Of a DNA stretch of 64,000 nt, positions 1-15,100 are shown one piece after another; position 1 is the first letter of the stretch, and each line of letters starts with the position of its first letter. Position numbers and translations under genes: made by a program. The notes beneath the pieces are model-generated. The model did not search any database, was not told the DNA's origin, and worked only from the letters and a program-made list of their open reading frames with translations. The DNA lies in NCBI RefSeq assembly GCF_000143415.4, contig NW_003314262.1, positions 4,226,021 to 4,290,020 of the forward strand, given 5' to 3'. This DNA comes from Selaginella moellendorffii (Eukaryota; Plantae; Lycopodiophyta).

Positions 1-207
1 GGGGATTGGGAGAGATTTGGGAATCTGTAGATGGATGGCTAACACTCCGTTGCTCGTGCAGTAAGCAGCTGAAACCAAGTAGGACCAAGTAGGAGCTGGT
101 ACCATAGGCGAGAACCTTGGCGAGGGAACTTAGCACAAGCCAAGGCAGAGTTGGTCGGATAGGCGAGGTAAGCTGGCAAATTGGAAAGGAAAAATTTGTG
201 GCTTACA
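1..207 (+). repeat. 3' part of the 5' LTR of element A
   Basis: Ends ...GTGGCTTACA, followed by ATT and the PBS; same end as the LTR finishing at 12160. Confidence 0.95.
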
Positions 208-210
208 ATT

Positions 211-222
211 TGGTATCGGAGC
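211..222 (+). promoter_or_regulatory. Primer binding site (tRNA-iMet type)
   Basis: TGGTATCGGAGC 3 nt after the LTR end; one mismatch to canonical TGGTATCAGAGC. Confidence 0.9.
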
Positions 223-347
223 CTCTTCCTCACTTCTAGCGAAGGATAGAGGCGGATTGCTGAGAGAGGGCAAGGGCAGGACGTAAGCGAACCCAGGCAG
301 AGACGGAACCTCCTCCAGAGCTGGAGCCTCCGGTCGAACAGGAGGCG

Positions 348-3300
348 ATGGATGAGGAATCCTTGCATGAGGAGGACTCCAGTGACGCAACTTCCAAACA
401 GGAGTCTAGTGGTGAGGTTCGGTCATCCAAGGCTCGATTGGATGTTCTAGAAGGACAATTGGCACAGACCAATGCCCTGCTAGAGACTCTCGTACGCAAG
501 CTAAAGCGTGATGAGAAGCGGAAGAAAAAGCGAAAGACTACGGATGCTGGCAGTGCAGAAGGTGCGGACCCTTTGGCAGGGACTGAGGCAAAACCAAACA
601 AGGTCGAACAGACCGAAGTGGAATCAGTCCCTCAGGCAGTTCCCAAGTACAAACCAAAGCCCCCACCGGTCTTCAAGGGAGTGAACGACTATAAGGTGGT
701 GGAGGATTGGTTTTACGATATGGAGGACTACTTCCGAGCGTTGCGATTACCAAGCTCGGAGAAAGTCCCATGTGCAAAACCATACTTGGCAGGATAATGC
801 CAAGTCTTGGTGGAGAACGACAGAGGCCAACGAAGGACCGGTGGCCACTTGGGAAATGATGAAGGCGAGGATCCGCGCAACTTACGTTCCTCCAAATGCT
901 ACTCTGCATCTAAGGGACGAGCTGAGTAGGCTGAAGCAGACCGGAACCATTCAGGAGTATGTGAATGGGTTTATGGCAAAGAGAATACTTGTCACGGACA
1001 TGGGGGATATGGATGCGTTCCATGCCTTCATATCAGGTTTGCAAACCTGGGCTCGCGGTGAAGTAATGCGGTGGAACCCGACCAACTACAAAGAAGCGTT
1101 GGATGCGGCCATCAAGGTGCATTTCAACGATAACCTGCGAAAGGGGAACACGACGGGGTCGGGATCCACGTTTAGCAAAGGGGCCAAACCAAGGGGAACG
1201 TTTAGCAGAGGGAAATTCAAGACGAGTTTCTCTAAGAATGAGTCCTCGGGGTTCCGGAAAGGCAGATCCGGTGGCCAGCAAGCGAGTACGTGGGGGAGTC
1301 AAGCGAAAAGAGACAAACCCACGGATAAGAAGGTCAAGTCGTATAGCAGTGTGGGAAACAACGTATGCTACAACTGCGGTGAAGCGGGACACTTCTCGAG
1401 GGAATGTCCCTACCCGAAGAAGGCCAGAGCCAATATGGCCATCAAGTCGGGTGAAGTCCAAACTGAGGTATGTGATCCAGTCCCTAACTCAAAGTTACTC
1501 ATTACACGAGCAACTTTGGTAGAGAGTCGTTTGCGACATCTACTAGCCCTCCGAGGGAAGCTCGGAGGTAGCTTTGTTAAAATCCTTATTGACACGGGTG
1601 CTTCGGATAATTTTGTGGCTGCAGACATAGTCCGGCAAGCCGGACTAACGGTGCAGCGGCTAGGCGAACCAAGGACTATAGAGTTTGTTCAAGGTAGCCA
1701 AAGCACCGATGAGGTACTTCGACAAGCGAGAGTCGAAGTGGGGACTTGGAAGGTGGACATGGACTTCACCGTGTTGGACATGGCGGGATTTGACGTGATC
1801 TTCGAAATGGGCTGGTTCAATCGATTCGTGGTAGCCCTGCATGGACAAGGTAGAAACCTTGTGGTACTGGCGAATGCCCAAGGAAGAAGATCTAGGGTGG
1901 AGGCCCAAGATCTAAAGGTAGGGCAAAGCAAGGCCAAAGATTCCTACTTAAACCTGGTGTCCACAAGAGGACAACTCACTAAAGGAACTAAGGCGGCCTT
2001 TTTGTGCTTACTCTCGGTGAAGAGTGACAAAAAGACAGGAATGGAAGAAGTACCTTTAGTGATCCAGTGGGTGTTGGACCAATTCCAGGATACCATGCCG
2101 GAGGAGCTACCGGTGGGGCTACCCCCAGCACGACCGATAGAACATAAGATTGAGCTGGTCGAGGGTGCTGAGGCAGTGGTTCGTCCCCCTTATCGTTTGA
2201 ACGAAAAAGAACTCAAGGAGCTCAAGTGCCAACTAGAGGAGTTGGTGGACAAAGGGTATGTTAGGTTGAGCAAGTCGCCGTATGGGGTGCCGGTGTTATT
2301 TGTGAAAAAGAAAGATGGATCTATGCGCATGTGCATAGACTACCGGTTGCTCAACAAGTATACAAAGAAGAACAAGTACCCTTTGCCAAGGATTGAGGAC
2401 CTGTTCGATAGGTTGGGAAAGGCAAAATACTTCTCGAGGATTAACCTAAGGTCAGGATACTACCAGATCAGAGTAGCCGAGGAAGATGTCGAGAAGACAA
2501 CCTGTCGAACGAGGTATGGGAGCTTTGAGTTTCTGGTGATGCCCTTCGGGCTATATAATGCACCGGCAACGTTTTCGGTGCTAATGAACCACATCTTTGT
2601 ACCCTATCTGGATCACTTCGTGGTCGTTTATATCGACGACATCCTGATCTATAGTGAGATGCTAGAGGAGCATGCCGAACACTTGGCGAAGGTGTTTGAG
2701 AAACTAAGGGAACACAAGCTGTATGCTAAAGAGAGCAAATGTGACTTTGCTCAACAAGAGGTAAAGTTTCTCGGGCATGTGGTGGGCCAGGACGGGCTCA
2801 AGGTGGACCCGGAGAAGGTCCAAGCGATCCAGGAATGGGAGCGACCATCCAATGTACACGAGTTGAGGGCATTCCTGGGGCTATGCAACTACTATCGAAA
2901 GTTTATCAGACACTATTCGAGAGTAGCCCTGCCCTTAACGGACCAAACAGGAAAAGGGAAGATGGTGTGGACAGCGGAATGCGAGGCGGCATTCATCCAC
3001 CTCAAAGGGAAGTTGAGGAAGGCTCCCGTATTGGCATTACCAGACTTTGGTAAGGACTTTGAGGTAGAAACGGATGCTTCGGACTTTGCGTTGGGCGCAG
3101 TTTTGAAGCAAGACTACCATCCGGTAGCGTTCTTCTCGAAGAAGCTGGACAAGGCTCAACAGAAGTGGCCTGCCCACGAGAAGGAATTGTTTGCGGTGGT
3201 CAAGGCGCTCAAGGAGTGGCGACACTACCTTGGGAGACACTTCAAGGTTTACACGGACAATGTGGCAATGAAACACTTCTTGTCACAGCCCGACCTAAGA

Positions 3301-4444
3301 GGGAAACAAGGTCGGTGGGCCAATGCCTTGGCCGAGTTTGATTGCGAAATTCTGTACAAGCCTGGGAAGAGCAACATCGTGGCGGATGCGCTAAGTCGAA
3401 AAGCGAGCTTGAGGTTGGCAATATCCAGCGCAATAGCAACCTTCTGGGACGATGTGCGGACAGCATATGAGAACGATGGTCTAGCACAGGAAGTGTTGCT
3501 GAGGAATCTAGAGGCGCGGGAAGCTCACCAGAGAGGTGAGCTGCCAACGGAAGAGAAAACGGGCTATGCGGAACACAACGGACTCATTTATTACAAGCAA
3601 ACGAGGGTGTATGTTCCAGAAGGGGAACTAAGGAAGGTGGCCTTAGAAGAGTGTCATGACGGACCTCTTGCGGGACACGGTGGAGTGCCCAAGACGATAG
3701 GCTTACTCAAAAGGAAGTACCATTGGCCAGATATGGCTAAGGACGTCCAAGACTATGTAAAGACATGTCCAACATGTCAGCAGGTAAAAGCCGTGACTAA
3801 GGCTAGTGGGGGCTTGTTGCAAAGCATCCCAATTCCAGATCGCCCGTGGAAATGTCTTACGATGGACTTCATCACGGGACTCCCCCCAAGCGAGGGGTTT
3901 GATGCGATATTCGTGGTGGTGGACCGATTTTCGAAAATGGCACACTTCATACCCACCACAACGGAGGTGGATGCGGAAGGTGTGGCGAAGCTGTTCTTCG
4001 AGCAAGTGGTTCGAGTGCGGGGAAGACCAGAAGATATCATCTCAGATCGAGATAAGATCTTCACTAGTAGGTTCTGGAGGACTCTCCTAGAACAGTATCG
4101 CACCAAGTTGAAATTCAGCACAGCCTATCACCCACAGACAGGTATGGGGTATTAAGTCAAGTTGTTGGCACTAACACTTCTTGACAGACGGACAAACGGA
4201 AAGGGTGAATAGGCAGTTGGAGGATTATTTGCGATGCTATGTCTCGGGAAACCAGACCGATTGGGTAAGTCATTTGGGACTTGCGGAAATGTGTTATAAC
4301 AACTCACCACATTCGAGTATCGAGGTGAGTCCATGGGAAGTTATCAATGGGCGAGCTATTGAAGGTCCTGTGGAACTCGGCGTGGCCGAGTATCATGGAG
4401 AGTTGCCCACAGTGGAGGCATTCACGGTGGAAAGACTCAGCATT
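348..4444 (+). CDS. Gag-Pol polyprotein of element A (gag, CCHC, protease, RT, RNase H, integrase N/core); 1-nt frameshift near 790; intron 4142-4187; cut by the PLE at 4445
   Basis: [14 protein letters not shown] knuckle, LIDTGAS protease, YIDD RT, ETDASD RNase H, H-H-C-C zinc finger, MDF / SDRD integrase residues; HPQT-DGQTER rejoined by splicing. Decayed copies near 56830 and 58750 lack the extra base at about 790. Confidence 0.92.
4142..4187 (+). other. Spliceosomal-type intron 1 in integrase (46 nt)
   Basis: GTATGG...CACTAAC...TTGACAG; removal gives ACA G|AC GGA CAA ACG GAA AGG = HPQTDGQTER; in-frame TAA inside. Confidence 0.85.
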
Positions 4445-4447
4445 AAT

Positions 4448-4758
4448 CACACAGGAGTTCGCGATTAATCTCCCCGACAAGATCACCACAATCTATACGG
4501 GAGATATCACAAAGTGCTACGAGGCCATCCCCCTCGAGGGAGATCAAGGCCTCACGACAGCCATGACAAACCTCGTCAATTTGGCTTTCGCGCACCAAAA
4601 CCACCTCCATAAGGACCTTTTTCTGATTCAAAAGAAGAACGGCGAGCTTGAGGCCGAATGGAAACCTCTACGCCACTCATCAGTGAAGGCCACCAGAATG
4701 GATCCAACAAAAGTCATCGAGCTAAATCACTTCATTATCCGGAACACATACGTCCGGC
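4448..4758 (+). repeat. 311 bp direct repeat, left copy (RT coding sequence)
   Basis: Matches 9686-9996 with 5 transitions. Confidence 0.97.
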
Positions 4759-5510
4759 TGGGTGACAGAGTATGGAGACAAGTCCGAGGGATTCCTATGG
4801 GCTTCTCGTGCTTGCCTCTGTGGTGTAACCTGTACCTATTCTATTTCGAGTATAACTTTATCACTCGACTCGCTCGTCTAGGCCGGTATGATCTGCTGCG
4901 CTTATTCGAACATACATTCCGATACATGGACGATCTGGCGTCAATGAATAACCCCATGATCCTCCGATTCCTTGACCCCGATCAAGTCGAATCCGAAGGA
5001 AATCCATTCTGGATATATCCATTACGTTTCCTGGCCATGCAGAACGAGATGGATAATCCATTCGTGAACACGGACGGCTCGCTCGTGAATCTGTCTGCTC
5101 ACTTCTTGAGCCTTCAGATTCAGATCATACGAGTTGATGGTACCTTCTTAACCACAAAATATGACAAGCGCCGATCACTTCCATTCAAAGTCTCGCTGTA
5201 CATTCATCGAGATTCAAACCGGCCCGTTGCAAACTCATCCAAGGTGATCCTGGGGCAAGTCTTTGCGCTTTTCTATCTGATTAATACCGCCGGTGGTGTC
5301 GTCCTTGAGATTGATAATCTCGTTGAATGCTTCGTGGAAAAAGGATTCCATCGCTATGCATTGAGACGACTCATCCTCAGTGGTCTGGATCGTATCATTC
5401 TCACCAGCCCCCTGACACCGGTACAAGCAGTCTTGGAAATTCTCTTTGACATCTGGAGAGAACCAGCCAATAGGCCACCACAGCTCGACGACTCAGCAAT
5501 TTCAAGCTGA
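4448..5510 (+). CDS. PLE reverse transcriptase, C-terminal half (palm and thumb)
   Basis: YTGDITKCYEAIP, WRQVRGIPMGFS, FRYMDDL, YDKRR, YIHRDSNRP; stop at 5508-5510 with no endonuclease after it. Confidence 0.9.
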
Positions 5511-6991
5511 GCACCAGGAACTCTGTCCTCTAGACAGGACGATCCATCAATTTAGCATCATATCGAAACATAATAGATTCGATATTTATGCCGTTTTGGA
5601 TTGTGAACAACAAAAGAATTAGTTCCCCCAAACTTACCATGCAGTCCTTGGTTACGCGCTGAACTAAAAAACGCAAGCGCACCTTTGACTACAACTGTGT
5701 TTTGATTGATAAAAATTAAAAAACAACACAAGTTGCTGTTCTCTCACTCTGAGACAGATCCCACGCCTTAACCACAGCAAGGTCTTCCTTAAAAACAAAT
5801 TTTTAAAGGAAACCTTACTTACAGAAAACTCTGTTTTCCCATGAATAAACTAATGGGACACATGAGTAGACGTGGCATGGTAAAAAACAAAACCTTGGAT
5901 TCCTCACAGAATCTCGCGCGAAGAAACACGCCGTACGGATTGGCAAACCTAATTACAAGCTATAGCTATTCGACTTCATGGCTGCGGGCGCTGGATTTTC
6001 TCACACCGAAAGGTATGAAGCGACGGGAAAAACCCTAATGTTAGGGTTTCTCGCTTGCATCCGCCGCCGCCGCATTCTCCAGGAGCGCATCCACAAGCAG
6101 AGCAATCTTGGGCCGCTGCAAGGCTGTGTGCTAGCACAACCACGCACACTTCTCGCCCACTCCAGGATCAACAGCCGCTTCATTGCGCACCGCAAGAATG
6201 AGCAGCGCCAACGAAGTGCTTGTTTGGGGATAGCTCAAAACGAGCTTACACCCACCACTAAGGTCGCGAGGAATCTCACTACCGCATTCCTGGCCACGCA
6301 AAAACAGGTACAAACGATTCGTTTTGCTGCTTTTTTTTTACCCTTGGCCTGTAGGAATCTCTCTCGGCCAGAGCGCTGGAACTAAACACCACAGCGACAC
6401 AAGGGGTTCTTACTGACTCTGCCCAGGTAGTGCTTGTACTCTCGACTGTTCCAGCTTCTAATCATCCGCTTAGAAAAAAGACGGGATGACAGCGACTGGT
6501 CCAGACGGCGAGATCCATGAGTCAACGGATAGCGATCAGGTTGAGCATGTTCCTTAGCTCTAATCTTTGGAAGTCACTTCTGATGTGCAGCCGGACATGT
6601 ACCTGAGTACATTGGCTCGTGAGCATCAGTCGCGCAAATCTCAGTTCAGTTTTGAGACCTAGCTTTGTACTTTCACAAAATGAGAGATAGAGCTAGCGGA
6701 GATTGCATTACTAATCCTCGTCTTCCATGATACAGGTACCCCCCGGACACCCAAACCGTAGGAGGTGACATAGGAATTGTCTAGGGAAATCGTTATGGTC
6801 GTGGTCGGTACCGGGTTACCGGGCGGATGATCCTATGCCTCGGACGAATGTACCGAAAACGACCTAGTCGATCTGCTTAACCAAAAATACCCACGAGGGA
6901 CAGCTGTGCCAGGGTGTGATACCTGGCTGCCGATACAAAATGCCATGCGATCCATCCCTACTTTCCCGCCGTACCGGATATGGACTGATGC

Positions 6992-8560
6992 GTGGCTTTC
7001 CAGGATTTCTGGCTACCCGAGATGACGGAGTACGCGAACACTGATGATTTTGTGGCTCCCGTCCCGGCAGTGCAGTACTTCTTACTGCTGTTAGCCGCAA
7101 AGAAACCTGAGCGCTTACGTGAGATTTTTGCATATGAGAAAAACATTGCGGACAAGCTGCTCACGGTGCCGGAATCCGAGGCAGTTGGCGAGAACAAGCG
7201 ATACCTCTGCCTCTTCCAGCAGGTTGAAACCAAAGAATGGTGGTGCCTAGTCTGGACACTCCTTACCGATCGAGTCAATGATAACCAGGCTCTACTACGA
7301 CAGTGGATGGCGGACATGGAAAAAGAACTCGTTAATTTCTCCTCCGCCGAACCAAGGATCACTTGGAAAATGCTCCAATGGTCCCAAGAATACAACCGGG
7401 TTACAGGGTATAAAGGCTCGTACGGGAAAGGTATTGATCTGGGAAAACCACAGATCGACCTCAGCAATGGTTTTGAGTTCCTGAGCCAGAGTGCACGGAC
7501 GCTCATGACTGGACTCATCCCATCACAGCCGGATACTCTAGAAGGAGCAAACGTGGACCGCATTGATAATGGTCGTATCATGTTTGACCCGTTGGAGAAT
7601 TTGAGTGGATGGAAATTTCCCTTCGCCACCACAAGAGTTCTCAATGCAGCCTCCCACCGCCTTCCAGAACCGCATAAGTTTTGGACGCTAACGAATCCTT
7701 TAGGATGGACATCCCCCTTGGAGGCATCCGACTGGATCCAGATGGTGGCTTTGTTACGACCGGATGCAGTACAGTGGTCAAAACAGACACTGGAAGCATC
7801 TTACCGACATGCAACGTTGGGAAACTATGCTTACAAACCAGCAATCCCGTTCCAAAAGACCGCGGATGAGGTTTTCAAGCAGGCTGCTTTCCATGGACGC
7901 TGTGATGGCGATGCCTTTTTGAATACAAAAAGCTGGAACCTATCACAAGGAGATCAACATACATGGAATCAGCTTCGACCGTACTGTCGCTGCGATTGCC
8001 AGGGATGTGAAGGAGGAATTGTCTGGCTTGACTCCTTGTTCTGGTACATGCTTAACAACCTGGACAAGTACTGGCCAGATTCAAGCTTGACGTCGTCAGA
8101 CCGCCTCGCCATCTTCCTGTCCCTACTTACGGCTAATCCGCAAGTGATCCTCCAGATAGCTGCCTTCCTTCAAATTCGAGAATGGATGCAAGCAGCGGCT
8201 ATTGAGGTGGCGAAAAAACCAGCCAACCCGGATCTGGAGTTCATCCCGCATGGGCAGACCAAGATGAATATATGCAAGTTCATCCCCGTCCAACAGTACC
8301 GATCCCCAACGACTTCACGATGTGATGGTAGCGAAAGCAATGGAGCTTTCTCACCCACACCGTCCTCACAACGCACGCTGGCGAGGTCTCGAGGCTTACC
8401 ACCTAATCGGAAACGTGATCGTCCCGATGGACAAACATCCACGGGGCTGACATCACAGGAGACGGGCACACCACCATCAATCTCCAAGACATCCGAGGCC
8501 AATGCAAGCTCAAACAAACAGAGGCTACGCAAAAGGCTCGGTGCAAGAAAGCAGCGATAA
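6992..8560 (+). CDS. PLE ORF1, unknown function (probably begins near 6795 across a nonsense codon and a frameshift)
   Basis: 522 aa open frame inside the PLE with a CRCDCQGC cluster and a basic NLS-like tail; an upstream frame (6831-7023) would join it through a 1-nt indel near 6997. Confidence 0.7.
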   Translation: MAFQDFWLPEMTEYANTDDFVAPVPAVQYFLLLLAAKKPERLREIFAYEKNIADKLLTVPESEAVGENKRYLCLFQQVETKEWWCLVWTLLTDRVNDNQALLRQWMADMEKELVNFSSAEPRITWKMLQWSQEYNRVTGYKGSYGKGIDLGKPQIDLSNGFEFLSQSARTLMTGLIPSQPDTLEGANVDRIDNGRIMFDPLENLSGWKFPFATTRVLNAASHRLPEPHKFWTLTNPLGWTSPLEASDWIQMVALLRPDAVQWSKQTLEASYRHATLGNYAYKPAIPFQKTADEVFKQAAFHGRCDGDAFLNTKSWNLSQGDQHTWNQLRPYCRCDCQGCEGGIVWLDSLFWYMLNNLDKYWPDSSLTSSDRLAIFLSLLTANPQVILQIAAFLQIREWMQAAAIEVAKKPANPDLEFIPHGQTKMNICKFIPVQQYRSPTTSRCDGSESNGAFSPTPSSQRTLARSRGLPPNRKRDRPDGQTSTGLTSQETGTPPSISKTSEANASSNKQRLRKRLGARKQR

Positions 8561-8627
8561 ATAAATTTCTGTTTTCTTCTTCCATGATTGGTAGCTAATG
8601 AAAGTGCTCTCGTGATTGCTTCCACAG

Positions 8628-9996
8628 TGTACTTTACACTACATCCATCATTTGGCCGGACGTAAATGGTTGGTCAAAGAGGGAACGGAGTGTGAACGAA
8701 AATTCGTACACCTCCGATATATTAGCGCCGGATTCGAGAGGATCAGTATCCGCACCCTTATGAGGGAATGCCTGGAAATGATTGGCCTAGATGCGGAACT
8801 CCTGGATCCCATCGTATTTTGCTGGAGGTATGAACCCCAGATCAAACACGACTTTTATAAACCCAAGGAGGTTTTCTGTAACTGGGACACTCATGCACCA
8901 CTGGTTTGCGAATGCAAACGATGGCCATGGGTGGCTTACCTCGACGAGACTGGACATGTGCGTACTTTGGATCCAAAGATCCTTGGCTCACGCATACTCA
9001 CGACTGTCATCGAGAAAGGTCTCAATCACATCACCCCAAAACCACTCCAGACAGCAAAAATCATTGCTGAAGTCTGTGAAGCCTGGGATCGGATTGCCAG
9101 TATGATCCCCGATGTCTACATCCGTAACTGGCCTAGCAACGAAGCTGCTGTTAAACAGCATATCAATTACCGGGTCCGAATGGCAGTACAAAATTGTCAG
9201 ACCACCCTGATGGTAGATGTGATGACCACCCCTGAGGCAAAGCGGCAATTAGAGTGGGTACATAAACACTTGTACATCAGTGGCGCCGATAAAGCGGCCA
9301 ACACACCCACCTTCTTTTGCAAAACGTTGGCCCGGGAGCAAGCGCTTGCACGGATGAATAGTGACGACTTTTCACTAGTAGTCTCGGACAATAATGTCCC
9401 TGAGACGCCTGAGCAAGTTGTAAAACAACTGCTCGGTGAACCACCCTTACAGGAATTCCCGCCGCAGAAACCAGATCTCCCTTACCTTATGGGAATCTAT
9501 AAAGCGCACAAGAATAAAATGCACTGGTTAACGAATGCGGATGGATGTGTCTTCTCTGAAATCACATTTTGCCTCACAGCTATCCTGAAAGGAATACAGG
9601 AGGCGCTACAAAACGTAGCCGATGATTTCTATGCACGGGCAAAATTCTTTGGAGGAAAAACGAACACGTGCTGGATCCTTGGATCCACACAGGAGTTCGC
9701 GATTAATCTCCCCGACAAGATCACCACGATCTATACAAGAGATATCACAAAGTGCTACGAGGCCATCCCCCTCGAGGGAGATCAAGGCCTCACGACAGCT
9801 ATGACAAACCTCGTCAATTTGGCTTTCGCGCACCAAAACCACCTCCATAAGGACCTTTTTCTGATTCAAAAGAAGAACGGTGAGCTTGAGGCCGAATGGA
9901 AACCTCTACGCCACTCATCAGTGAAGGCCACCAGAATGGATCCAACAAAAGTCATCGAGCTAAATCACTTCATTATCCGGAACACATACGTCCGGC
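8628..9996 (+). CDS. PLE reverse transcriptase, N-terminal half
   Basis: CECKRWPW..GHVRTLD..KGLNH, GADKAAN, PYLMGIYKAHK; preceded by a GCTAAT...TCCACAG acceptor; runs into the repeated RT segment. Confidence 0.85.
9686..9996 (+). repeat. 311 bp direct repeat, right copy
   Basis: Matches 4448-4758. Confidence 0.97.
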
Positions 9997-10539
9997 ATTT
10001 GGAATCTAGAATCATGAGGGATTCCTTGGAACGGGCTCAACAAAGGCAAACCAAATACGCGAACCAGAAGCGTCGGGATGTAGAGTTCCAAGCTGGGGAG
10101 AAGGTGTGGCTGAACACCAAGAACCTCAAACTACCAAGTGGGATCAGCCGAAAGTTGACCCAAAGGTAAAGATGCATGTATTCCTGTAAATGAATTGATC
10201 TTGAGTTCCTTAAGCAGATTCGCGGGGCCTTACGAGATTGAGGCACGAATCGGTAAAGTGGCTTACCGACTCCGACTTCCTCGAGAGATGGGGAAGATGC
10301 ACCCAGTGTTCCACGTGAACTTACTCAAGCCGTACTTTGAGGATCCGCTTCGGAAGGACCAAGTGAGACTTTTACCTGAGGTTATCCAAGGGGAAGAGGA
10401 ATACGAAGTCGAGGCCATCCTCAATGCGCGCAAGAGCAAGCGACAAGGACACGAGGTGAGAGAGTTCCATGTGAAGTGGAAAGGATTTCCACACTGCGAA
10501 GCAACATGGGAACCGGAGGAGAACCTAGCGAACGCGTGA
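9997..10539 (+). CDS. Integrase C-terminus (GPY/F module) and chromodomain of element A, with intron 10166-10217
   Basis: KLTQR|FAGPY, YRLRLP, HPVFHVNLLKPY, EYEVEAILN..FHVKWKGF..ATWEPEENL; the TGA at 10537 is probably a CGA>TGA change. Confidence 0.92.
10166..10217 (+). other. Spliceosomal-type intron 2 in integrase (52 nt)
   Basis: AG|GTAAAG...TAAGCAG|A; removal gives CAA AG|A TTC GCG GGG CCT TAC = QRFAGPY; AT-rich with an in-frame stop. Confidence 0.85.
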
Positions 10540-10990
10540 GATCTAGTAGAGGAATTTCTGCAAGGCAGAACTCTATGTACTTATGCAAAATTCAATTAAA
10601 AATATCAATTTGCAAAGTTGAGCAAGTGGCATATGTTGGGACCCGAAGGCACGCCAAAGGTAAGCTAATTAGCATGGGTTGGATAGGTCGACCAGGCGTA
10701 GGGCACTACGCCCAACTCCCCGCGGGGATGTTGAATCCGTAGACGTATTCTATGGAGGTTGGGTTCGAGTCCCAACCCCCTAGTAAAGCAAGGCTGGGTT
10801 CAAGTCCTGACCCCATACTAGGGCGTGGTGAGGTGAGGAGTATAGGGACACCTATATTCCGTTGTCATGGGCTCTTGGCCGGGGAGGCTAACTTAGGCAC
10901 ACCGCTAAGTGGGGGGATGCCCCCGGAGACATGGTCAACAAGTCGTAGGATAAAACGAGACGTTCGATGTGGGCATCGAACTTCTTCTAT

Positions 10991-11001
10991 GGGTGGTGGA
11001 G
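10991..11001 (+). promoter_or_regulatory. Polypurine tract of element A
   Basis: GGGTGGTGGAG just before the TG of the 3' LTR. Confidence 0.75.
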
Positions 11002-11002
11002 T

Positions 11003-12160
11003 TGTAAGGAACCGACTCCCCGAGATGTCGTAGGCTAAAGGATCCCCAAAAGCTTGACCGAAATGACAAAGAGTTCATCGGATGGGACCAAGTTGAGAAT
11101 CGAGTCCAAGACCGACTCTAGGACCGAGTTCGAGATAGAGTCCGGAATCGAGTCCGAGACCGACTCGGGGACCGAGTTCGAGTCCGAGTTCGAGACCGAG
11201 TTCGAGATGGAGTCCGAAATCCGAAATCGGGTCTGAGACCGAGTCCGAGGTCGAGTCCGAGGTCGGGTCTGAGATCGGGTCCGAGATCGAGTCCGAAATC
11301 GAGTCCGAGACCGAATCCGAAGTCGGATCCGAAATCGGGTCCGAGATCGAGCCAGAGACTAAGTCCAAATACTAATACGGGTCAAGGGGTGAAAGCCCAA
11401 AGCGTGCGTCTCCCAGGGGGGGGGGGCTGCAATGGGTTCCAAAAGTATAGTAGGGATAGTGAGGTCCAGGAACCAGTTTTGAAGGGACTCTCCAGTTGGG
11501 CTTCCAAACCGACTTGAGGTTGAGACTGGGACCGAGGGGCCTTGGGTGGGAGTGAGCATGGACTTGGCTGGTGCCGGAGGGGCCATCCAAGGAAGTGCTC
11601 AAGAGCAGCTCCCACTCCCAAAAGGGAAACCGACTGCGGTGCTCCCGGCTCAGGTGGAGTGGTGCCCCACTTGAGTACCTTGTGGCTCATTGGTCCTCGC
11701 CCTTCCGGGGGCTTGGGCCTTCCCTTCGGGATGGAAGAGGGGGGGTAGAGGTACCCATACCGGGCCGTTAGGCCATGGTGTTTCGCCCCGACGTCCCGAA
11801 GCAAGTGCTGCACCCAAGGCTTGGGATTTAGAGGGTCCCATGATCAAGTCTTGTGGTACCAAGGAGTGTTAGGAATCTGGAGGCTTGGTGTGCTTGGCTG
11901 CTTGTGCCTGCGGGGAGTGTAGCCGAACCTTAAGTCCAGTCTAACTCGGGGAGGGGGATTGGGAGAGATTTGGGAATCCGTAGATGGATGGCTAACACTC
12001 TGTTGCTCGTGCAGTAAGTAGCTGAAACCAAGTAGGACCAAGTAAGAGCTGGTACCATAGGCGAGAACCTTGGCGAGGGAACTTAGCACAAGCCAAGGCA
12101 GAGTTGGTCGGATAGGCGAGGTAAGCTGGCAAATTGGAAAGGAAAAATTTGTGGCTTACA
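11003..12160 (+). repeat. 3' LTR of element A (1158 bp) with a CCGAGN hexamer array
   Basis: TGTAAG...CTTACA termini; same boundaries as the solo LTR at 44632-45788. Confidence 0.95.
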
Positions 12161-15100
12161 CACTACTCATTCTCGAATAGTCTCAAATTCCATCGACATA
12201 ACCTTTTCACTTTGGAACTTTTAATTTTGACTTCTCAGAGTCAATTTCCTAGGTGTCTTTGACACCTTACATTGCACATGGTGCAACTCCAGTTCCCCAT
12301 CCTATGAAGTTTTTTACTTGAGGGCACCATCATCCTTTCTTCGATATCGTGCCACCTTTGGCACTAAGTTCCAGTTATTATAATTTGTGCTAGGGCTGCC
12401 CACAGCCTTATTATTTGGCTACCTTACCGCTCCCCCTTTTGGAGTATCCACTTTTGCCAAATCAAAGCGGTTAGGAATCCATCCTTGGGGAAACATTGCC
12501 TTTCCCACAATCCGTTAGCACTCAACACATTAATGTTCTTGCTTAACTTTGCCATTTGGATTCTTTTCTATAATTCCCATGGCTCTTTTCTTAGCCACTA
12601 GTCTTTTGCTCCTATCCTTGATTGTTGCACCCAGCAACATAGGATCACTACCTCCATTTTCGAGGTTTCTTTTCGGTTCCATAGCAACACTTTGCTTTGC
12701 CAAGTCCAAAGGGTGTTCACCCTTAGTACCCCTCTTTAATATTTTCTGTTGTGGGCTCTATCCACGGCCCAACTTTTAAGACCCTCCCTTGGATCTCTTG
12801 TAGAGACTACTTTCCTCATACTTACTATGCCATCACATTAACATAGCTCATTTCCCTTAGGTGTTCTTCCCACCTGATCACCTTGACCAAGCTATACCAT
12901 CATCAATAATTCAAATCAACACTTTTGAACTAGGAACTTTATCCCTTAAACTCACAAGGACCTTGTCCTTATTTTAGCCATAAGACCACCTAATGATCTA
13001 ACCTTGGCACCTTAACAGGTTTGCCAATAGGTATTAGGTCTTCCAGACCTTTAAGTTGTTGACCATGACCCCGGGGGCATCCCCCACACTTGGCGGTGCA
13101 CTCAAGCCAGCCCTTCCGGCTAAGGGTCCATAGCAACTGAGACTGGGTGTCCCCATTTCATTCACCACGTCCTTGGTGCCACTCGCACCAAAGTGTTCAA
13201 GTTAGATATGCCGAGCCACACTAAGCAATCTAACTGTGCATCACAACTCCGAGGCATCCCTCGCTTGGTGGTGTGCCCAAACCAATCTCCTCACTGAGAG
13301 TCCATGACCACCGAAAAATGAGTGTCCTCATATTCCAAACCATCACCACACCCTAGTGATTTGGGACTCGAACCCAAGCACTAGAGGGTCGGGACTCGAA
13401 CCCAACCTCCGTATATGCATCTATGGATGGCATCACACAGGATGCCTGGTGTGACTCCCCACGCCGGTGCACCATCATGTACTTAAAGCGTGTTATAGAT
13501 CACAGCTTAGGAACCGAGTTCCTCTGCACTGTTAAATCCTCTCACTTGACAAGTCTGTGATCATGCATGGACTCCTCTATGCTCGGCCCCATGGGCTACC
13601 CCTTTTGAAGTTAGCACCTTTAATTAGGGGATTTGTTCCCCTGACTTGCCAATCTCACTTAGCAAGTCATCCGGCCACCATAATATGGTTCATGCATAAG
13701 CGTGAAAGTCCTTAACCATCGACTTTCATTCAAAGCCCTCTTCTTTGAACACTCAAGAACTACTTCTCCAACCTTGATAGCCTCACCTCATGGCTAGCTT
13801 CAAGACCACGCTTCTGCTGCGCCACTCCGATTTCGCGCACTCTAGGAACCATTTACACTTGGCTTTCTAGATACTTATCTACCTAGAATTGTCTTTAGGA
13901 ACATTCAAGGAACTCTGTTCCTTAGCTTGCCAAGGCTTCTCCTTCGCAAGCTCCCTACTCCCCATATGGTCTAACATGGATAATTCCACATTTTAGACTC
14001 TCTATGGCATCGTAGTTGCTAGTAGTAATATCCTTGAGCACCCTTTTGATTCTCCACTCCCAACTTGCATAACCACTGTTGGTTATGCCCTTCAATTTTT
14101 ATGGTTCAGTTCCATCCCAATACTACTTACCTTTTGGCCTTATATGTTTCCTTTGGTTATTCTCCTCCAAACTAGGAGGATAGCTTTGCACCTTCTACCA
14201 TGCCTTAGCAAGTATTCATAGGGATGAACCTACCCAATAGCTTAGGGAGTGGTTCCTCAATCTGGGCATGCTCACCTTATAATCCCACATATCGGGATTA
14301 ACGTTGCTACTTATAGGCCTCTATATGCCTATTACTAGCCTTGCCAAAATCCCATTTTTTGTTTTATCCAAATCAAGTAGACGGATTTCTTCTGTCTCCA
14401 GAACCTTGGACGTTTGGATAGCACCTTCTATCCATCATTTGCTAGGGACTTAGTCTCTTGGGCATTATCTAATGCCCTTGTGACTCCAAACACCACCTCT
14501 TGGGGTTCTAGAGTGTTTGGGTGTCCCAATGATGGCGTCCTTGACAATGAGCATTTCCTTTTATTATGACATTGACTTACTATATTGCAACATAAGCAAC
14601 TTATCCCCGATAAGGGTATATTTAACTTTTTTATGCTATTAAAAAGTCTTGGGTAGCTATCTTCTACCCGTTTAACCAATTACCTGCATCTCATGCTTAG
14701 TTGCCTCATAGTTGTCAAGTCCTACAACTCATTGCTTAGTGCTTCCACACCTCCATCATTATTTGGGTCACCACACTCCAACCACATGCCTTCCTGTATA
14801 AGCTATGCCATTCCCATTTCCATTGGGATTCCCTTGGCAAGGGGTTCTCATGAACCCATCAACATAACCTCAAGGCATCACACCTTGGCCCATTTGGTGT
14901 CTCCACACCATCGGCTCCATGCATCTGCCTTTATGATACTTTGCATTTGTGTCTAGGTCTTTGCCAAGACCAACCCAATTGTTTCTTATGCTAACTATCC
15001 GTTAGCACTACACCATAGTGTTCGCACACAACTCTGCACCAAAGTTGCTTTTTCTAGGAACACCTTTCCCAACACTTTAGCATGGCACATTCTGCCATCA

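What the first reader, a model, noticed from the sequence alone, without database searches (positions are those of the whole stretch)
4445..9996. Circularly permuted endonuclease-less Penelope-like element with both ends inside RT
Seen: the order is RT C-half, 3' UTR, 5' region, ORF1, RT N-half, bounded by a 311 bp direct repeat made of RT coding sequence. That is about 1.06 turns of a 5238 bp unit, complete only as a circle or tandem array. The tail-to-head junction (about 5510-6400) has no telomeric array and no poly(A). Known: PLE partial-tandem insertions usually end at the element 3' end, and endonuclease-less PLEs are mainly described at telomeres. Inference: the template was a circular or multimeric RNA entered at an arbitrary point (rolling-circle-like reverse transcription). 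Recombination between the repeats would release a circle with an intact RT gene.
Basis: partly seen in the sequence, partly recalled or inferred. Interest (0 to 1): 0.85.

Follow-up and report, generated by a model that had tools for sequence, protein, structure and literature searches.

The report
Rotated off-target copy of rDNA retroelement
A 5.5-kb copy of a published spikemoss jumping gene sits inside another jumping gene with its gene order rotated. The rotation follows from the family's habit of forming head-to-tail chains; only its end point inside the reverse-transcriptase gene is unusual.

Summary
Window 4448-9996 (5549 bp) is 1.06 turns of a 5238-bp unit, bounded by a 311-bp direct repeat of RT coding sequence (5 mismatches). 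It is nested in the integrase of a Ty3/gypsy chromovirus of Selaginella moellendorffii.

The element is an endonuclease-less Penelope-like element, but not a telomeric one. It matches the published 28S-rDNA-targeting spikemoss family (Craig et al. 2021). Earlier scan notes on other DNA had already recorded this family's arrays and its 17-nt 28S mimic.

I mapped 13 further copies at 11 other loci of the same genome.
- Eight end at one 3' terminus, unit 6888, whose last 17 nt mimic the 28S target.
- Three loci hold head-to-tail arrays with the same 5238-bp period, one of at least 3.3 units.
- The tail-to-head junction (6888|6889, not 5510-6400) is identical in all 13 crossings.

So a junction-containing template is normal for this family, and a circle is not required. 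No hammerhead ribozyme was found. The unusual part is that copying began inside the RT gene. One other copy (L003) also has a unique internal end, and two more share a second end point at unit 6296/6297. The integrase is contiguous across the insert, so this is not a deletion product.

RNA-templated and DNA-level origins could not be separated, and sequencing reads were unavailable. Interest is modest.

The parts
4448..9996 (+). Whole insertion: 1.06 turns (5549 bp) of a 5238-bp unit of the rDNA-targeting endonuclease-less Penelope-like element
   Evidence: Searches give the repeat and spacing. Searches show collinearity with other copies of the family at 80-97% identity.
4448..4758 (+). Left copy of the 311-bp terminal direct repeat (RT coding sequence, motif A region)
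   Evidence: It has one private G>A change relative to the family consensus.
9686..9996 (+). Right copy of the 311-bp terminal direct repeat. Its last base (9996 = unit 4758) is the non-canonical 3' end of the insertion.
   Evidence: It has four private transitions. In arrays the RT reading frame continues from 9685/9996 into 4448/4759 (L008 7546-9534, 662 aa).
4448..5510 (+). C-terminal part of the RT gene (motifs A to E and thumb), stop codon at 5508-5510
   Evidence: ORF list; weak RVT_1 match; homologues at E=1e-193 in Selaginella and 1e-69 in moss; alignment A2.
5511..6888 (+). 3' untranslated region of the unit, ending at the family's canonical 3' terminus (6888)
   Evidence: Eight other copies end at unit 6886-6888, each with a different flank.
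6872..6888 (+). 17-nt 3'-terminal mimic of the 28S rRNA target site (antisense), with one extra A
   Evidence: Copy L005 sits in 28S on both sides. cmscan aligns the element's last bases to LSU model positions about 1130-1146. All copies carry the mimic.
6888..6889 (+). Tail-to-head junction (3' terminus directly followed by the 5' end ACCC(A/G)CGAGGG)
   Evidence: The junction is the same, with no length variation, in all 13 crossings in the window, L002, L003 and L007-L011.
6992..8560 (+). ORF1 (522 aa, function unknown, contains CRCDCQGC). It corresponds to the N-terminal extension with a CxCX1-8C motif described for the published family.
   Evidence: homologues only in Selaginella; no Pfam or Atlas match.
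8616..9996 (+). N-terminal part of the RT gene (CxC motif VCEC, HVRT, GLNHI, ADKAAN, LPYLMG..HK..RWLTNA, motif A)
6033..6052 (.). Conserved palindrome of two inverted telomere-repeat / telo-box units (AAACCCTAA-YG-TTAGGGTTT)
   Evidence: It is conserved in all subfamilies, down to about 80% overall identity.
4786..4796 (+). GAGGGATTCCT in the element, 27 nt downstream of the base equivalent to the right end. It is identical to 11 nt in the gypsy flank.
   Evidence: Empirical P = 6.5e-4 for a match of 11 nt or more between random 60-mers of the two elements.
10016..10026 (+). GAGGGATTCCT in the gypsy right flank, 19 nt from the junction
1..4447 (+). Left part of the host Ty3/gypsy chromovirus: end of the 5' LTR (1-207), gag-pol (772-4155), a 46-nt GT..AG intron-like gap (4142-4187), and integrase to codon ..LSIN at 4447
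   Evidence: Pfam, LTR match 1-207 = 11954-12160, translations.
9997..12160 (+). Right part of the same gypsy element: rest of the integrase (HLESRIMRD..), SH3 and chromodomain, and the 3' LTR (11002-12160)

Best explanation
This is an off-target insertion of the published 28S-rDNA-targeting, endonuclease-less Penelope-like element of Selaginella into the integrase gene of a Ty3/gypsy element. What is shown: normal products of the family are 5'-truncated copies and head-to-tail arrays. These all end at one 3' terminus, a 17-nt mimic of the 28S site that most likely anneals to the target and lets a free DNA 3' end prime. They all share one invariant tail-to-head junction. What is inferred for the window copy: it was made by the same RT on the same kind of junction-containing template. 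That template was either a more-than-unit-length RNA read from an array or pseudo-LTR copy, or a unit RNA followed by a jump from its 5' end to an RNA 3' end. The difference is that a free DNA 3' end at a break in the gypsy integrase started copying inside the RT gene (unit 4758) instead of at the 3' terminus. Synthesis then ran 5549 nt through ORF1, across the junction, through the 3' region and 311 nt past a full turn, and was joined to the other side of the break. The 311-bp repeat is therefore terminal redundancy of the cDNA. A covalently circular RNA is compatible but not needed.
For: Family identity: closest proteins are Selaginella, moss and lycophyte hypothetical RTs. The fold search ranks eleven TERT structures first, E 4e-8 to 2e-4, ahead of group II intron and R2 RTs. 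The CxC and DK motifs are present. No endonuclease or other Pfam domain was found. Copy L005 lies in 28S on both sides, and L001 and L005 share the same 28S breakpoint. These features match the description in PMC8557442. Normal behaviour of the family: 8 of the 12 copies whose 3' end could be read (13 mapped; L009's lies beyond the fetched DNA) end at unit 6886-6888 with unrelated flanks, and 5' ends are scattered. Arrays of 1.7 or more and 3.3 or more units have a 5238-bp period. The junction is identical in 13 crossings from about seven independent insertions. Primary internal end: the gypsy integrase halves abut within about 4 residues in five homologues and stay in frame, with a target duplication of 2 bp or less and no filler. 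Redundancy was identical at birth: the five differences between the repeats are all private transitions from the family consensus. The repeat divergence (1.6%) does not exceed the host LTR divergence (1.9%). Internal ends recur: L003 ends at unit 7525, and L001 and L010 end at 6296/6297. An 11-nt identity lies next to the priming-side junction only.
Against: Nothing here shows that RNA rather than DNA was the immediate source. There is no base pairing at the very junction (0-2 nt). The 11-nt match is offset by 19 and 27 nt, so it cannot have primed directly. Only 13 other copies were sampled, and they were reached through annotated gene models, which favours long copies with open reading frames. 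The published family is said to carry canonical hammerhead ribozymes, and none was found in this subfamily. The unit number could be under-assembled. The RT model is of moderate quality (mean pLDDT 64).
Confidence: 0.5

Rival explanations
1. Rolling-circle reverse transcription of a covalently circular unit-length RNA, entered at an arbitrary point and stopped just after one turn. This is the first reader's preferred reading, and Cervera and de la Pena proposed it for PLEs in general in 2014.
For: It explains the invariant junction, the arrays, and two copies with arbitrary ends and about one turn (1.06 and 0.96). The idea is in the literature (PMC4209133; the retrozyme preprint).
Against: No hammerhead or other ribozyme was found on either strand of the unit or of relatives. 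The junction region has no unusual fold (z = -1.0). Eight copies end at one defined 3' terminus, so linear RNA with a fixed end is the usual template. Turn counts of junction-crossing copies are spread (0.96, 1.003, 1.06, 1.10, 1.34, at least 1.7, at least 3.3) rather than fixed.
Confidence: 0.15
2. DNA-level origin. A fragment of a genomic head-to-tail array, or a unit circle (eccDNA) excised from one and opened at a random point, was captured at a double-strand break in the gypsy element.
For: Suitable arrays with 99% identical units exist. L003 has filler DNA of 28 and 8 nt at its two junctions, as in end-joining repair. Earlier scan notes report other rotated insertions in this genome (not checked by me).
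Against: A monomer circle opened once gives exactly one unit, not plus 311 bp. A random array fragment has no reason to be near one unit. The window junctions are clean. The family otherwise shows the hallmarks of retrotransposition.
Confidence: 0.2
3. Copy-choice capture inside a gypsy virus-like particle. The gypsy RT switched from gypsy RNA to a co-packaged PLE RNA and back, and the chimeric cDNA was then integrated as an LTR element.
For: Both elements are in the same orientation. The 11-nt identity lies behind the switch point, where invasion-driven strand transfer by an RNase H-containing RT would place a docking site. The LTR divergence (1.9%) and repeat divergence (1.6%) are alike.
Against: The return switch would have to land within about 12 nt of the departure point. 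There is no microhomology at the return junction. It still needs a junction-containing PLE RNA.
Confidence: 0.07
4. Secondary product or artefact. Either a conventional partial dimer that later lost its 3' part by deletion, or an assembly chimera.
For: Conventional dimers and arrays are common in the family. Internal deletions occur in them (L007). Reads could not be checked.
Against: A deletion would have to end exactly at the element/target boundary, because the integrase is contiguous and in frame. The two gypsy halves belong to one element with matching LTRs. The two repeat copies carry different private mutations.
Confidence: 0.08

Closest known systems
EN-less 'PLE-X' families of Selaginella (Chlamys-related Penelope-like elements targeting 28S rDNA; Craig, Yushenova, Rodriguez and Arkhipova 2021, PMC8557442)
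   Same: Same host genus. No GIY-YIG endonuclease. CxC motif upstream of the RT. DK motif. A separate N-terminal ORF with a CxCX1-8C-type motif. Relatives in mosses. Insertion at one site of the 28S gene in relatives L001 and L005. Partial tandems.
   Different: No canonical hammerhead ribozyme was detected in this subfamily, although the paper reports them for these families. The window copy is outside rDNA and lacks the family's 3' end at its right edge. I could not compare it with the published consensus sequences because no supplement was held.
Pseudo-LTR / partial-tandem insertions of Penelope-like elements in general (Evgen'ev and Arkhipova 2005, as summarised in PMC8557442)
   Same: A head-to-tail junction inside the insertion, a variably truncated upstream copy, and direct repeats made of element sequence.
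   Different: In the classical form the downstream copy is complete and the insertion ends at the element's 3' end, so the repeat contains that 3' end. Here the downstream copy is cut short inside the RT gene and the repeat is internal coding sequence.
Telomeric EN-less PLEs (Athena, Coprina; Gladyshev and Arkhipova 2007, as cited in PMC8557442)
   Same: There is no endonuclease. The RNA 3' end carries a short copy of the target that can anneal to a free DNA 3' end.
   Different: The target mimic is 28S rDNA rather than telomeric repeats. There is no terminal telomeric repeat run and no ribozyme. The copy is not at a chromosome end.
Endonuclease-independent LINE-1 insertions at DNA breaks (my own knowledge: Morrish et al. 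2002)
   Same: Use of a pre-existing DNA end, an internal (3'-truncated) start on the RNA, and no or minimal target duplication.
   Different: It is a different RT lineage, and L1 events do not cross a tail-to-head junction.
Circular-RNA retrozymes thought to be mobilised by PLE RTs through rolling-circle copying (PMC4209133; PMC7761336; bioRxiv 10.64898/2026.07.22.740005)
   Same: Tandem head-to-tail genomic copies, and the proposal of more-than-unit reverse transcription.
   Different: Retrozymes are small, non-coding and defined by hammerhead ribozymes. This unit is 5.2 kb, coding, and has no detectable ribozyme.

Membership tests
Penelope-like elements | RT closer to telomerase RT than to other RTs | tested here: met
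   The AlphaFold model of the intact 662-aa RT from array L008 (mean pLDDT 64) matches TERT chains at ranks 1-11 (E 3.6e-8 to 1.6e-4). Group II intron RT scores 6e-4 and R2 scores 3e-3. Sequence searches against PDB found nothing.
Penelope-like elements | Conserved N-terminal DK(G) motif upstream of RT motif 1 | tested here: met
   SG(L/A)DKA is nearly invariant in alignment A2. The window has SGADKAAN.
Penelope-like elements | Frequent 5' truncation with a common 3' end, and partial tandems (pseudo-LTRs) | tested here: met
   Eight copies share the 3' end at unit 6886-6888 and have scattered 5' ends. L002 has a 520-bp pseudo-LTR. L007-L009 are arrays.
Penelope-like elements | Hammerhead ribozyme in the pseudo-LTR / 3' region (common but not universal) | tested here: not met
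   There is no Rfam hammerhead hit at E up to 10 in the unit and none at gathering score in 11 loci. A motif scan found only coding-sequence matches.
EN-less 28S-targeting PLE-X (Craig et al. 2021) | No GIY-YIG endonuclease | tested here: met
   Pfam scans of all ORFs of 80 aa or more on both strands of the unit, and of the intact RT, found only a weak RVT_1 match.
EN-less 28S-targeting PLE-X (Craig et al. 2021) | CxC motif N-terminal to the RT, and an N-terminal extension with CxCX1-8C | tested here: met
   VCEC in the RT ORF aligns with CxC in homologues. ORF1 has CRCDCQGC. How ORF1 and the RT are joined was not resolved: they are in different frames, and the one GT..AG candidate is out of frame in this copy.
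EN-less 28S-targeting PLE-X (Craig et al. 2021) | Insertion at one precise site of the 28S rRNA gene | tested here: met
   This is met for the family. L005 is flanked by LSU model positions about 1174-1352 on one side and up to about 1146 on the other. L001 has the same left breakpoint. The window copy itself is not in rDNA.
EN-less 28S-targeting PLE-X (Craig et al. 2021) | Clustering with the published PLE-X consensus sequences in an RT tree | not testable with these tools
   No supplementary sequences are held for PMC8557442.
Telomeric EN-less PLEs (Athena/Coprina) | 3' end with reverse-complement telomeric repeats next to a hammerhead ribozyme, and location at telomeres | tested here: not met
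   The 3' end is a 28S mimic. The window has no telomeric repeat run, and none lies at the element ends in the loci. No ribozyme was found.
DIRS/Ngaro-type elements with circular intermediates | Tyrosine recombinase, gypsy-like RT with RNase H, and split or inverted terminal repeats | tested here: not met
   No recombinase or RNase H domain was found. The RT is TERT-like. No inverted repeats were found.
Endogenous pararetrovirus-type integrations | Capsid, protease and RT-RNase H genes on a circular genome | tested here: not met
   None of these domains is present.

The most novel reading that the evidence does not exclude
The family replicates from a closed, or end-to-end held, unit-length template. 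The RT can enter it at any point where a free DNA end happens to pair, and can run round it once or many times. This would happen without a ribozyme, and one mechanism would explain the invariant junction, the multi-unit arrays and the rotated copies with internal ends.
Probability: 0.12. Interest if true: 0.7.

Novelty: new member of a known kind. Interest (0 to 1): 0.35.

Why it matters
How Penelope-like elements build their tandem and pseudo-LTR structures, and how endonuclease-less ones find a primer, are open questions. Craig et al. 2021 say so explicitly for this spikemoss group. This copy contributes two points, together with L003 and the invariant junction in about seven independent insertions. 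First, the tail-to-head junction is part of, or precisely regenerated on, the template. Second, the RT can start away from the 3' terminus at an ordinary chromosomal break. That makes the family a usable natural system for testing template jumping against multimeric or circular templates. On its own, the window copy is one aberrant, dead-on-arrival insertion of a known family.

Tried and rejected
- **Empty site of the gypsy element.** The third protein search returned only distant plant gypsy proteins. No other copy of this integrase lies in the window or in the 11 loci. I used protein-level continuity instead.
- **Hammerhead ribozymes.** None was found by Rfam or by a motif scan.
- **Sequence link to solved structures.** None was found, either with the single protein or with a profile. 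Only the fold search worked.
- **ORF1 function.** There was no Pfam or Atlas lead.
- **ORF1-RT splicing.** The only GT..AG pair (8541-8627) is out of frame in this copy, and no slippery site was examined further.
- **RNA fold of the junction region.** It is not unusual.
- **Telomeric, DIRS-like and pararetroviral readings.** These were rejected on domain content and end structure.
- **Reverse nesting (gypsy inserted into a PLE array).** Rejected, because the two gypsy halves with their LTRs lie outside the PLE.
- **'Once around' length argument.** It was weakened once L010 (1.34 turns), L011 (1.003) and the arrays were mapped.
Full report
**Observation**

A repeat search of 3000-12000 finds one long direct repeat, 4448-4747 / 9686-9985, with 5238-bp spacing. 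Alignment and BLASTN extend it to 311 bp, 4448-4758 = 9686-9996, with five mismatches. Between the repeats the + strand carries these features:
- an ORF ending at 5510 that holds RT motifs (..DITKCYEAIPL.., GIPMGFSC.PLWCNLYL, FRYMDDL);
- about 1.5 kb without a credible ORF;
- ORF1 at 6992-8560;
- an ORF from 8616 that runs into the right repeat.

The right repeat continues the N-terminal RT frame and the left repeat opens the C-terminal one.

**Context**

The flanks are two halves of one Ty3/gypsy chromovirus. On the left are gag, protease, RT, RNase H and integrase core; on the right are the integrase SH3 and chromodomain. The LTRs match, 1-207 = 11954-12160 at 98.1%. The integrase reads ..TVERLSIN up to 4447 and HLESRIMRDSLERAQ.. 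from 9996, in frame. In five homologous polyproteins the two pieces abut within about four residues. There is no filler and at most a 2-bp target duplication. The element is thus a clean, primary insertion into the gypsy integrase. It is not the remnant of a larger insertion trimmed by a deletion.

**What the element is**

The RT fragment's best matches are hypothetical proteins of Selaginella moellendorffii (up to 83% identity). Next come a moss (Ceratodon), a lycophyte (Diphasiastrum) and many environmental contigs at about 40%.
- Pfam sees only a sub-threshold RVT_1 match and no endonuclease, RNase H, integrase or recombinase, in any ORF of the unit on either strand.
- An alignment of the intact 662-aa RT from an array with 17 homologues shows a CxC motif, HVRTMD, GLNHIPL, SGLDKA (the PLE 'DK' motif) and the RT core.
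- Sequence and profile searches of the PDB are blank.
- A model of the RT (mean pLDDT 64) matches telomerase RTs at ranks 1-11 in a fold search, ahead of group II intron and R2 RTs.

This is the signature of a Penelope-like element.

**Other copies in the same genome**

I fetched 11 loci of the public S. moellendorffii assembly through annotated proteins. I mapped the copies they hold, 13 in all, on the unit. All positions are in window numbering.

| Class | Copy | Path on the unit | Note |
|---|---|---|---|
| One shared 3' end (6886-6888), unrelated flanks | L004 | 4525 to 6887 | |
| | L005 | 4821 to 6888 | |
| | L006 | 7792 to 6886 | |
| | L011 | 6870 to 6886 | 1.003 turns |
| | L002 | 6370 to 6887 | 520-bp pseudo-LTR, interrupted by an LTR element |
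| | L007 | ends at 6888 | |
| | L007, second copy | ends at 6888 | divergent copy in the same locus |
| | L008 | ends at 6888 | |
| Head-to-tail arrays, 5238-bp period (subset of the above, plus L009) | L007 | about two units | has deletions |
| | L008 | at least 1.74 units | start lies in an assembly gap |
| | L009 | at least 3.3 units | runs off the fetched DNA |
| Second shared end point, different flanks | L001 | ends at 6297 | |
| | L010 | ends at 6296 | 1.34 turns |
| Unique internal end, crosses the junction | L003 | 7742 to 7525 | 0.96 turns; 28-nt and 8-nt fillers |

A further divergent fragment at the start of locus L007 (unit 7706 to 4750, about 74-77% identity) was mapped, but its ends were not examined, so it is not in the table.

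Array units differ by 0.1-0.9% from each other, and the window copy differs by 2.8% from them. The sequence across 6888|6889 (..CTTAACCAAAAAT|ACCC(A/G)CGAGGG..) is identical in length in all 13 crossings, which come from about seven independent insertions. The tail-to-head junction is therefore at 6888|6889, not at 5510-6400.

**Target of the family**

L005 lies in a 28S gene, antisense, with rRNA on both sides. L001 and L005 share the same left 28S breakpoint.
- cmscan aligns the last bases of the element itself to the 28S model. The element's final 17 nt (6872-6888) equal the 28S sequence next to the site, except for one extra base, and that extra base is present in the L005 junction.
- So the element's RNA, not the target, templated that stretch.
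- This fits priming by annealing of the RNA 3' end to a free DNA end. It is the rDNA counterpart of the telomeric-repeat tails of Athena and Coprina.
- Together with the CxC motif, the missing endonuclease, the extra N-terminal ORF with a CxCX1-8C-like motif and the moss relatives, this matches the EN-less 28S-targeting spikemoss families described by Craig et al. 2021 (PMC8557442).

One discrepancy remains. That paper reports canonical hammerhead ribozymes, and I found none by Rfam or by a motif scan. Earlier notes of this scan on other DNA reached the same identification and the same 17-nt mimic. I re-derived both independently here.

**How the window copy arose**

Two facts are shown. Templates or products containing the junction are the rule in this family, and the window copy's right end is a primary, non-canonical end inside the RT gene.

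The five differences between the two 311-bp repeats are all private G>A or C>T changes from the family consensus, one in the left copy and four in the right. Three of the five changed positions sit in CpG dinucleotides. The two copies were therefore identical when inserted. Their divergence (1.6%) is no greater than that of the host LTRs (1.9%).

The most economical reading runs as follows.
- A free DNA 3' end at a break in the gypsy integrase started reverse transcription at unit 4758, not at the 3' terminus.
- Synthesis crossed the junction. This happened either because the RNA was longer than one unit (read from an array or a pseudo-LTR copy) or by the precise 5'-to-3' end jump that also builds the arrays.
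- Synthesis stopped 311 nt beyond a full turn.

A covalently circular RNA would give the same product, but nothing requires it.
- There is a well-defined linear 3' end in eight copies.
- No ribozyme was found.
- The junction region has no special fold (z = -1.0).
- Turn numbers are spread (0.96, 1.003, 1.06, 1.10, 1.34, at least 1.7, at least 3.3).

The circular-RNA idea for PLEs is also not new (Cervera and de la Pena 2014; retrozyme literature).

**Alternatives I could not exclude**
- Capture of an array fragment or of eccDNA at a break. The arrays are suitable donors, and L003 has end-joining-type fillers.
- Copy-choice by the gypsy RT inside a particle. The two elements have the same orientation. 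An 11-nt identity (GAGGGATTCCT, 4786-4796 / 10016-10026) lies beside the priming-side junction only. Its empirical P is 6.5e-4 per comparison, and four comparisons were made.

The offset of that identity (19 and 27 nt) means it cannot be the primer-template duplex itself. It remains unexplained.

**Limits**
- The sample of copies is small and biased towards annotated ORFs.
- No empty site of the gypsy element was recovered.
- No published consensus was at hand for a tree.

**Verdict**

The copy belongs to a published family, and its rotated order follows from that family's ordinary head-to-tail habit. The interesting residue is the internal start of copying and the invariant junction. These bear on the unresolved mechanism of PLE tandem formation but do not settle it.

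Noticed in passing
window 6033-6052 (also in L001-L011): A 20-nt palindrome made of two inverted plant telomere-repeat / telo-box units (consensus AAACCCTAACGTTAGGGTTT). It is conserved in every subfamily of the element, down to about 80% overall identity. It lies about 850 nt upstream of the tail-to-head junction. It could be a promoter element or a relic of a telomeric past.
   Followed up: partly
window 4142-4187 and about 10170-10215: The host gypsy integrase is interrupted by a 46-nt GT..AG segment whose removal restores ..[12 protein letters not shown]... A second such gap seems to lie before the SH3/chromodomain part. Another finding of the scan (s1-411642) covers this.
   Followed up: partly
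window 4786-4796 and 10016-10026: An 11-nt identity (GAGGGATTCCT) between the element just beyond its right break-point equivalent and the gypsy flank. Empirical P is 6.5e-4. The other junction has no counterpart.
   Followed up: yes
L001 12573 and L010 14509: Two copies with unrelated flanks end at unit 6296/6297, about 590 nt before the usual 3' end. This may be a second RNA 3' end or a preferred internal start.
   Followed up: no
L002 3445-8748: A gag-only LTR retrotransposon with 113-bp LTRs sits inside a PLE copy. It is flanked by a 317-bp duplication of PLE sequence (unit 7508-7824) instead of a short target duplication. Possible causes are integration of its two ends into neighbouring array units, or recombination between two insertions.
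   Followed up: partly
L003 4433-7352 and 13670-16679: The rotated PLE copy in L003 lies between two 90% identical copies of a 3-kb stretch. That stretch is a repeat also present at window 12161-14792, and each copy carries the same nested insertion. The PLE seems to bridge a gap between two old tandem copies.
   Followed up: partly
L001 7695-8907; L005 10062-10253 and 12316-13743: Fragments of 28S and 5.8S rRNA genes, broken at the PLE target site, lie outside the rDNA arrays, next to ordinary genes.
   Followed up: no
L011 9835-9864: A nearly full-length single copy starts with a 19-nt copy of the element's own 3' end. A degenerate second copy of that motif (CCTGCTTAAAT) precedes it, as if the 3' tail had been copied repeatedly.
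   Followed up: no
window 11069-11370: A 12-nt periodic repeat (about 25 units of TCCGAGACCGAG-like sequence) lies inside the gypsy 3' LTR, and similar tracts occur elsewhere in the window.
   Followed up: no
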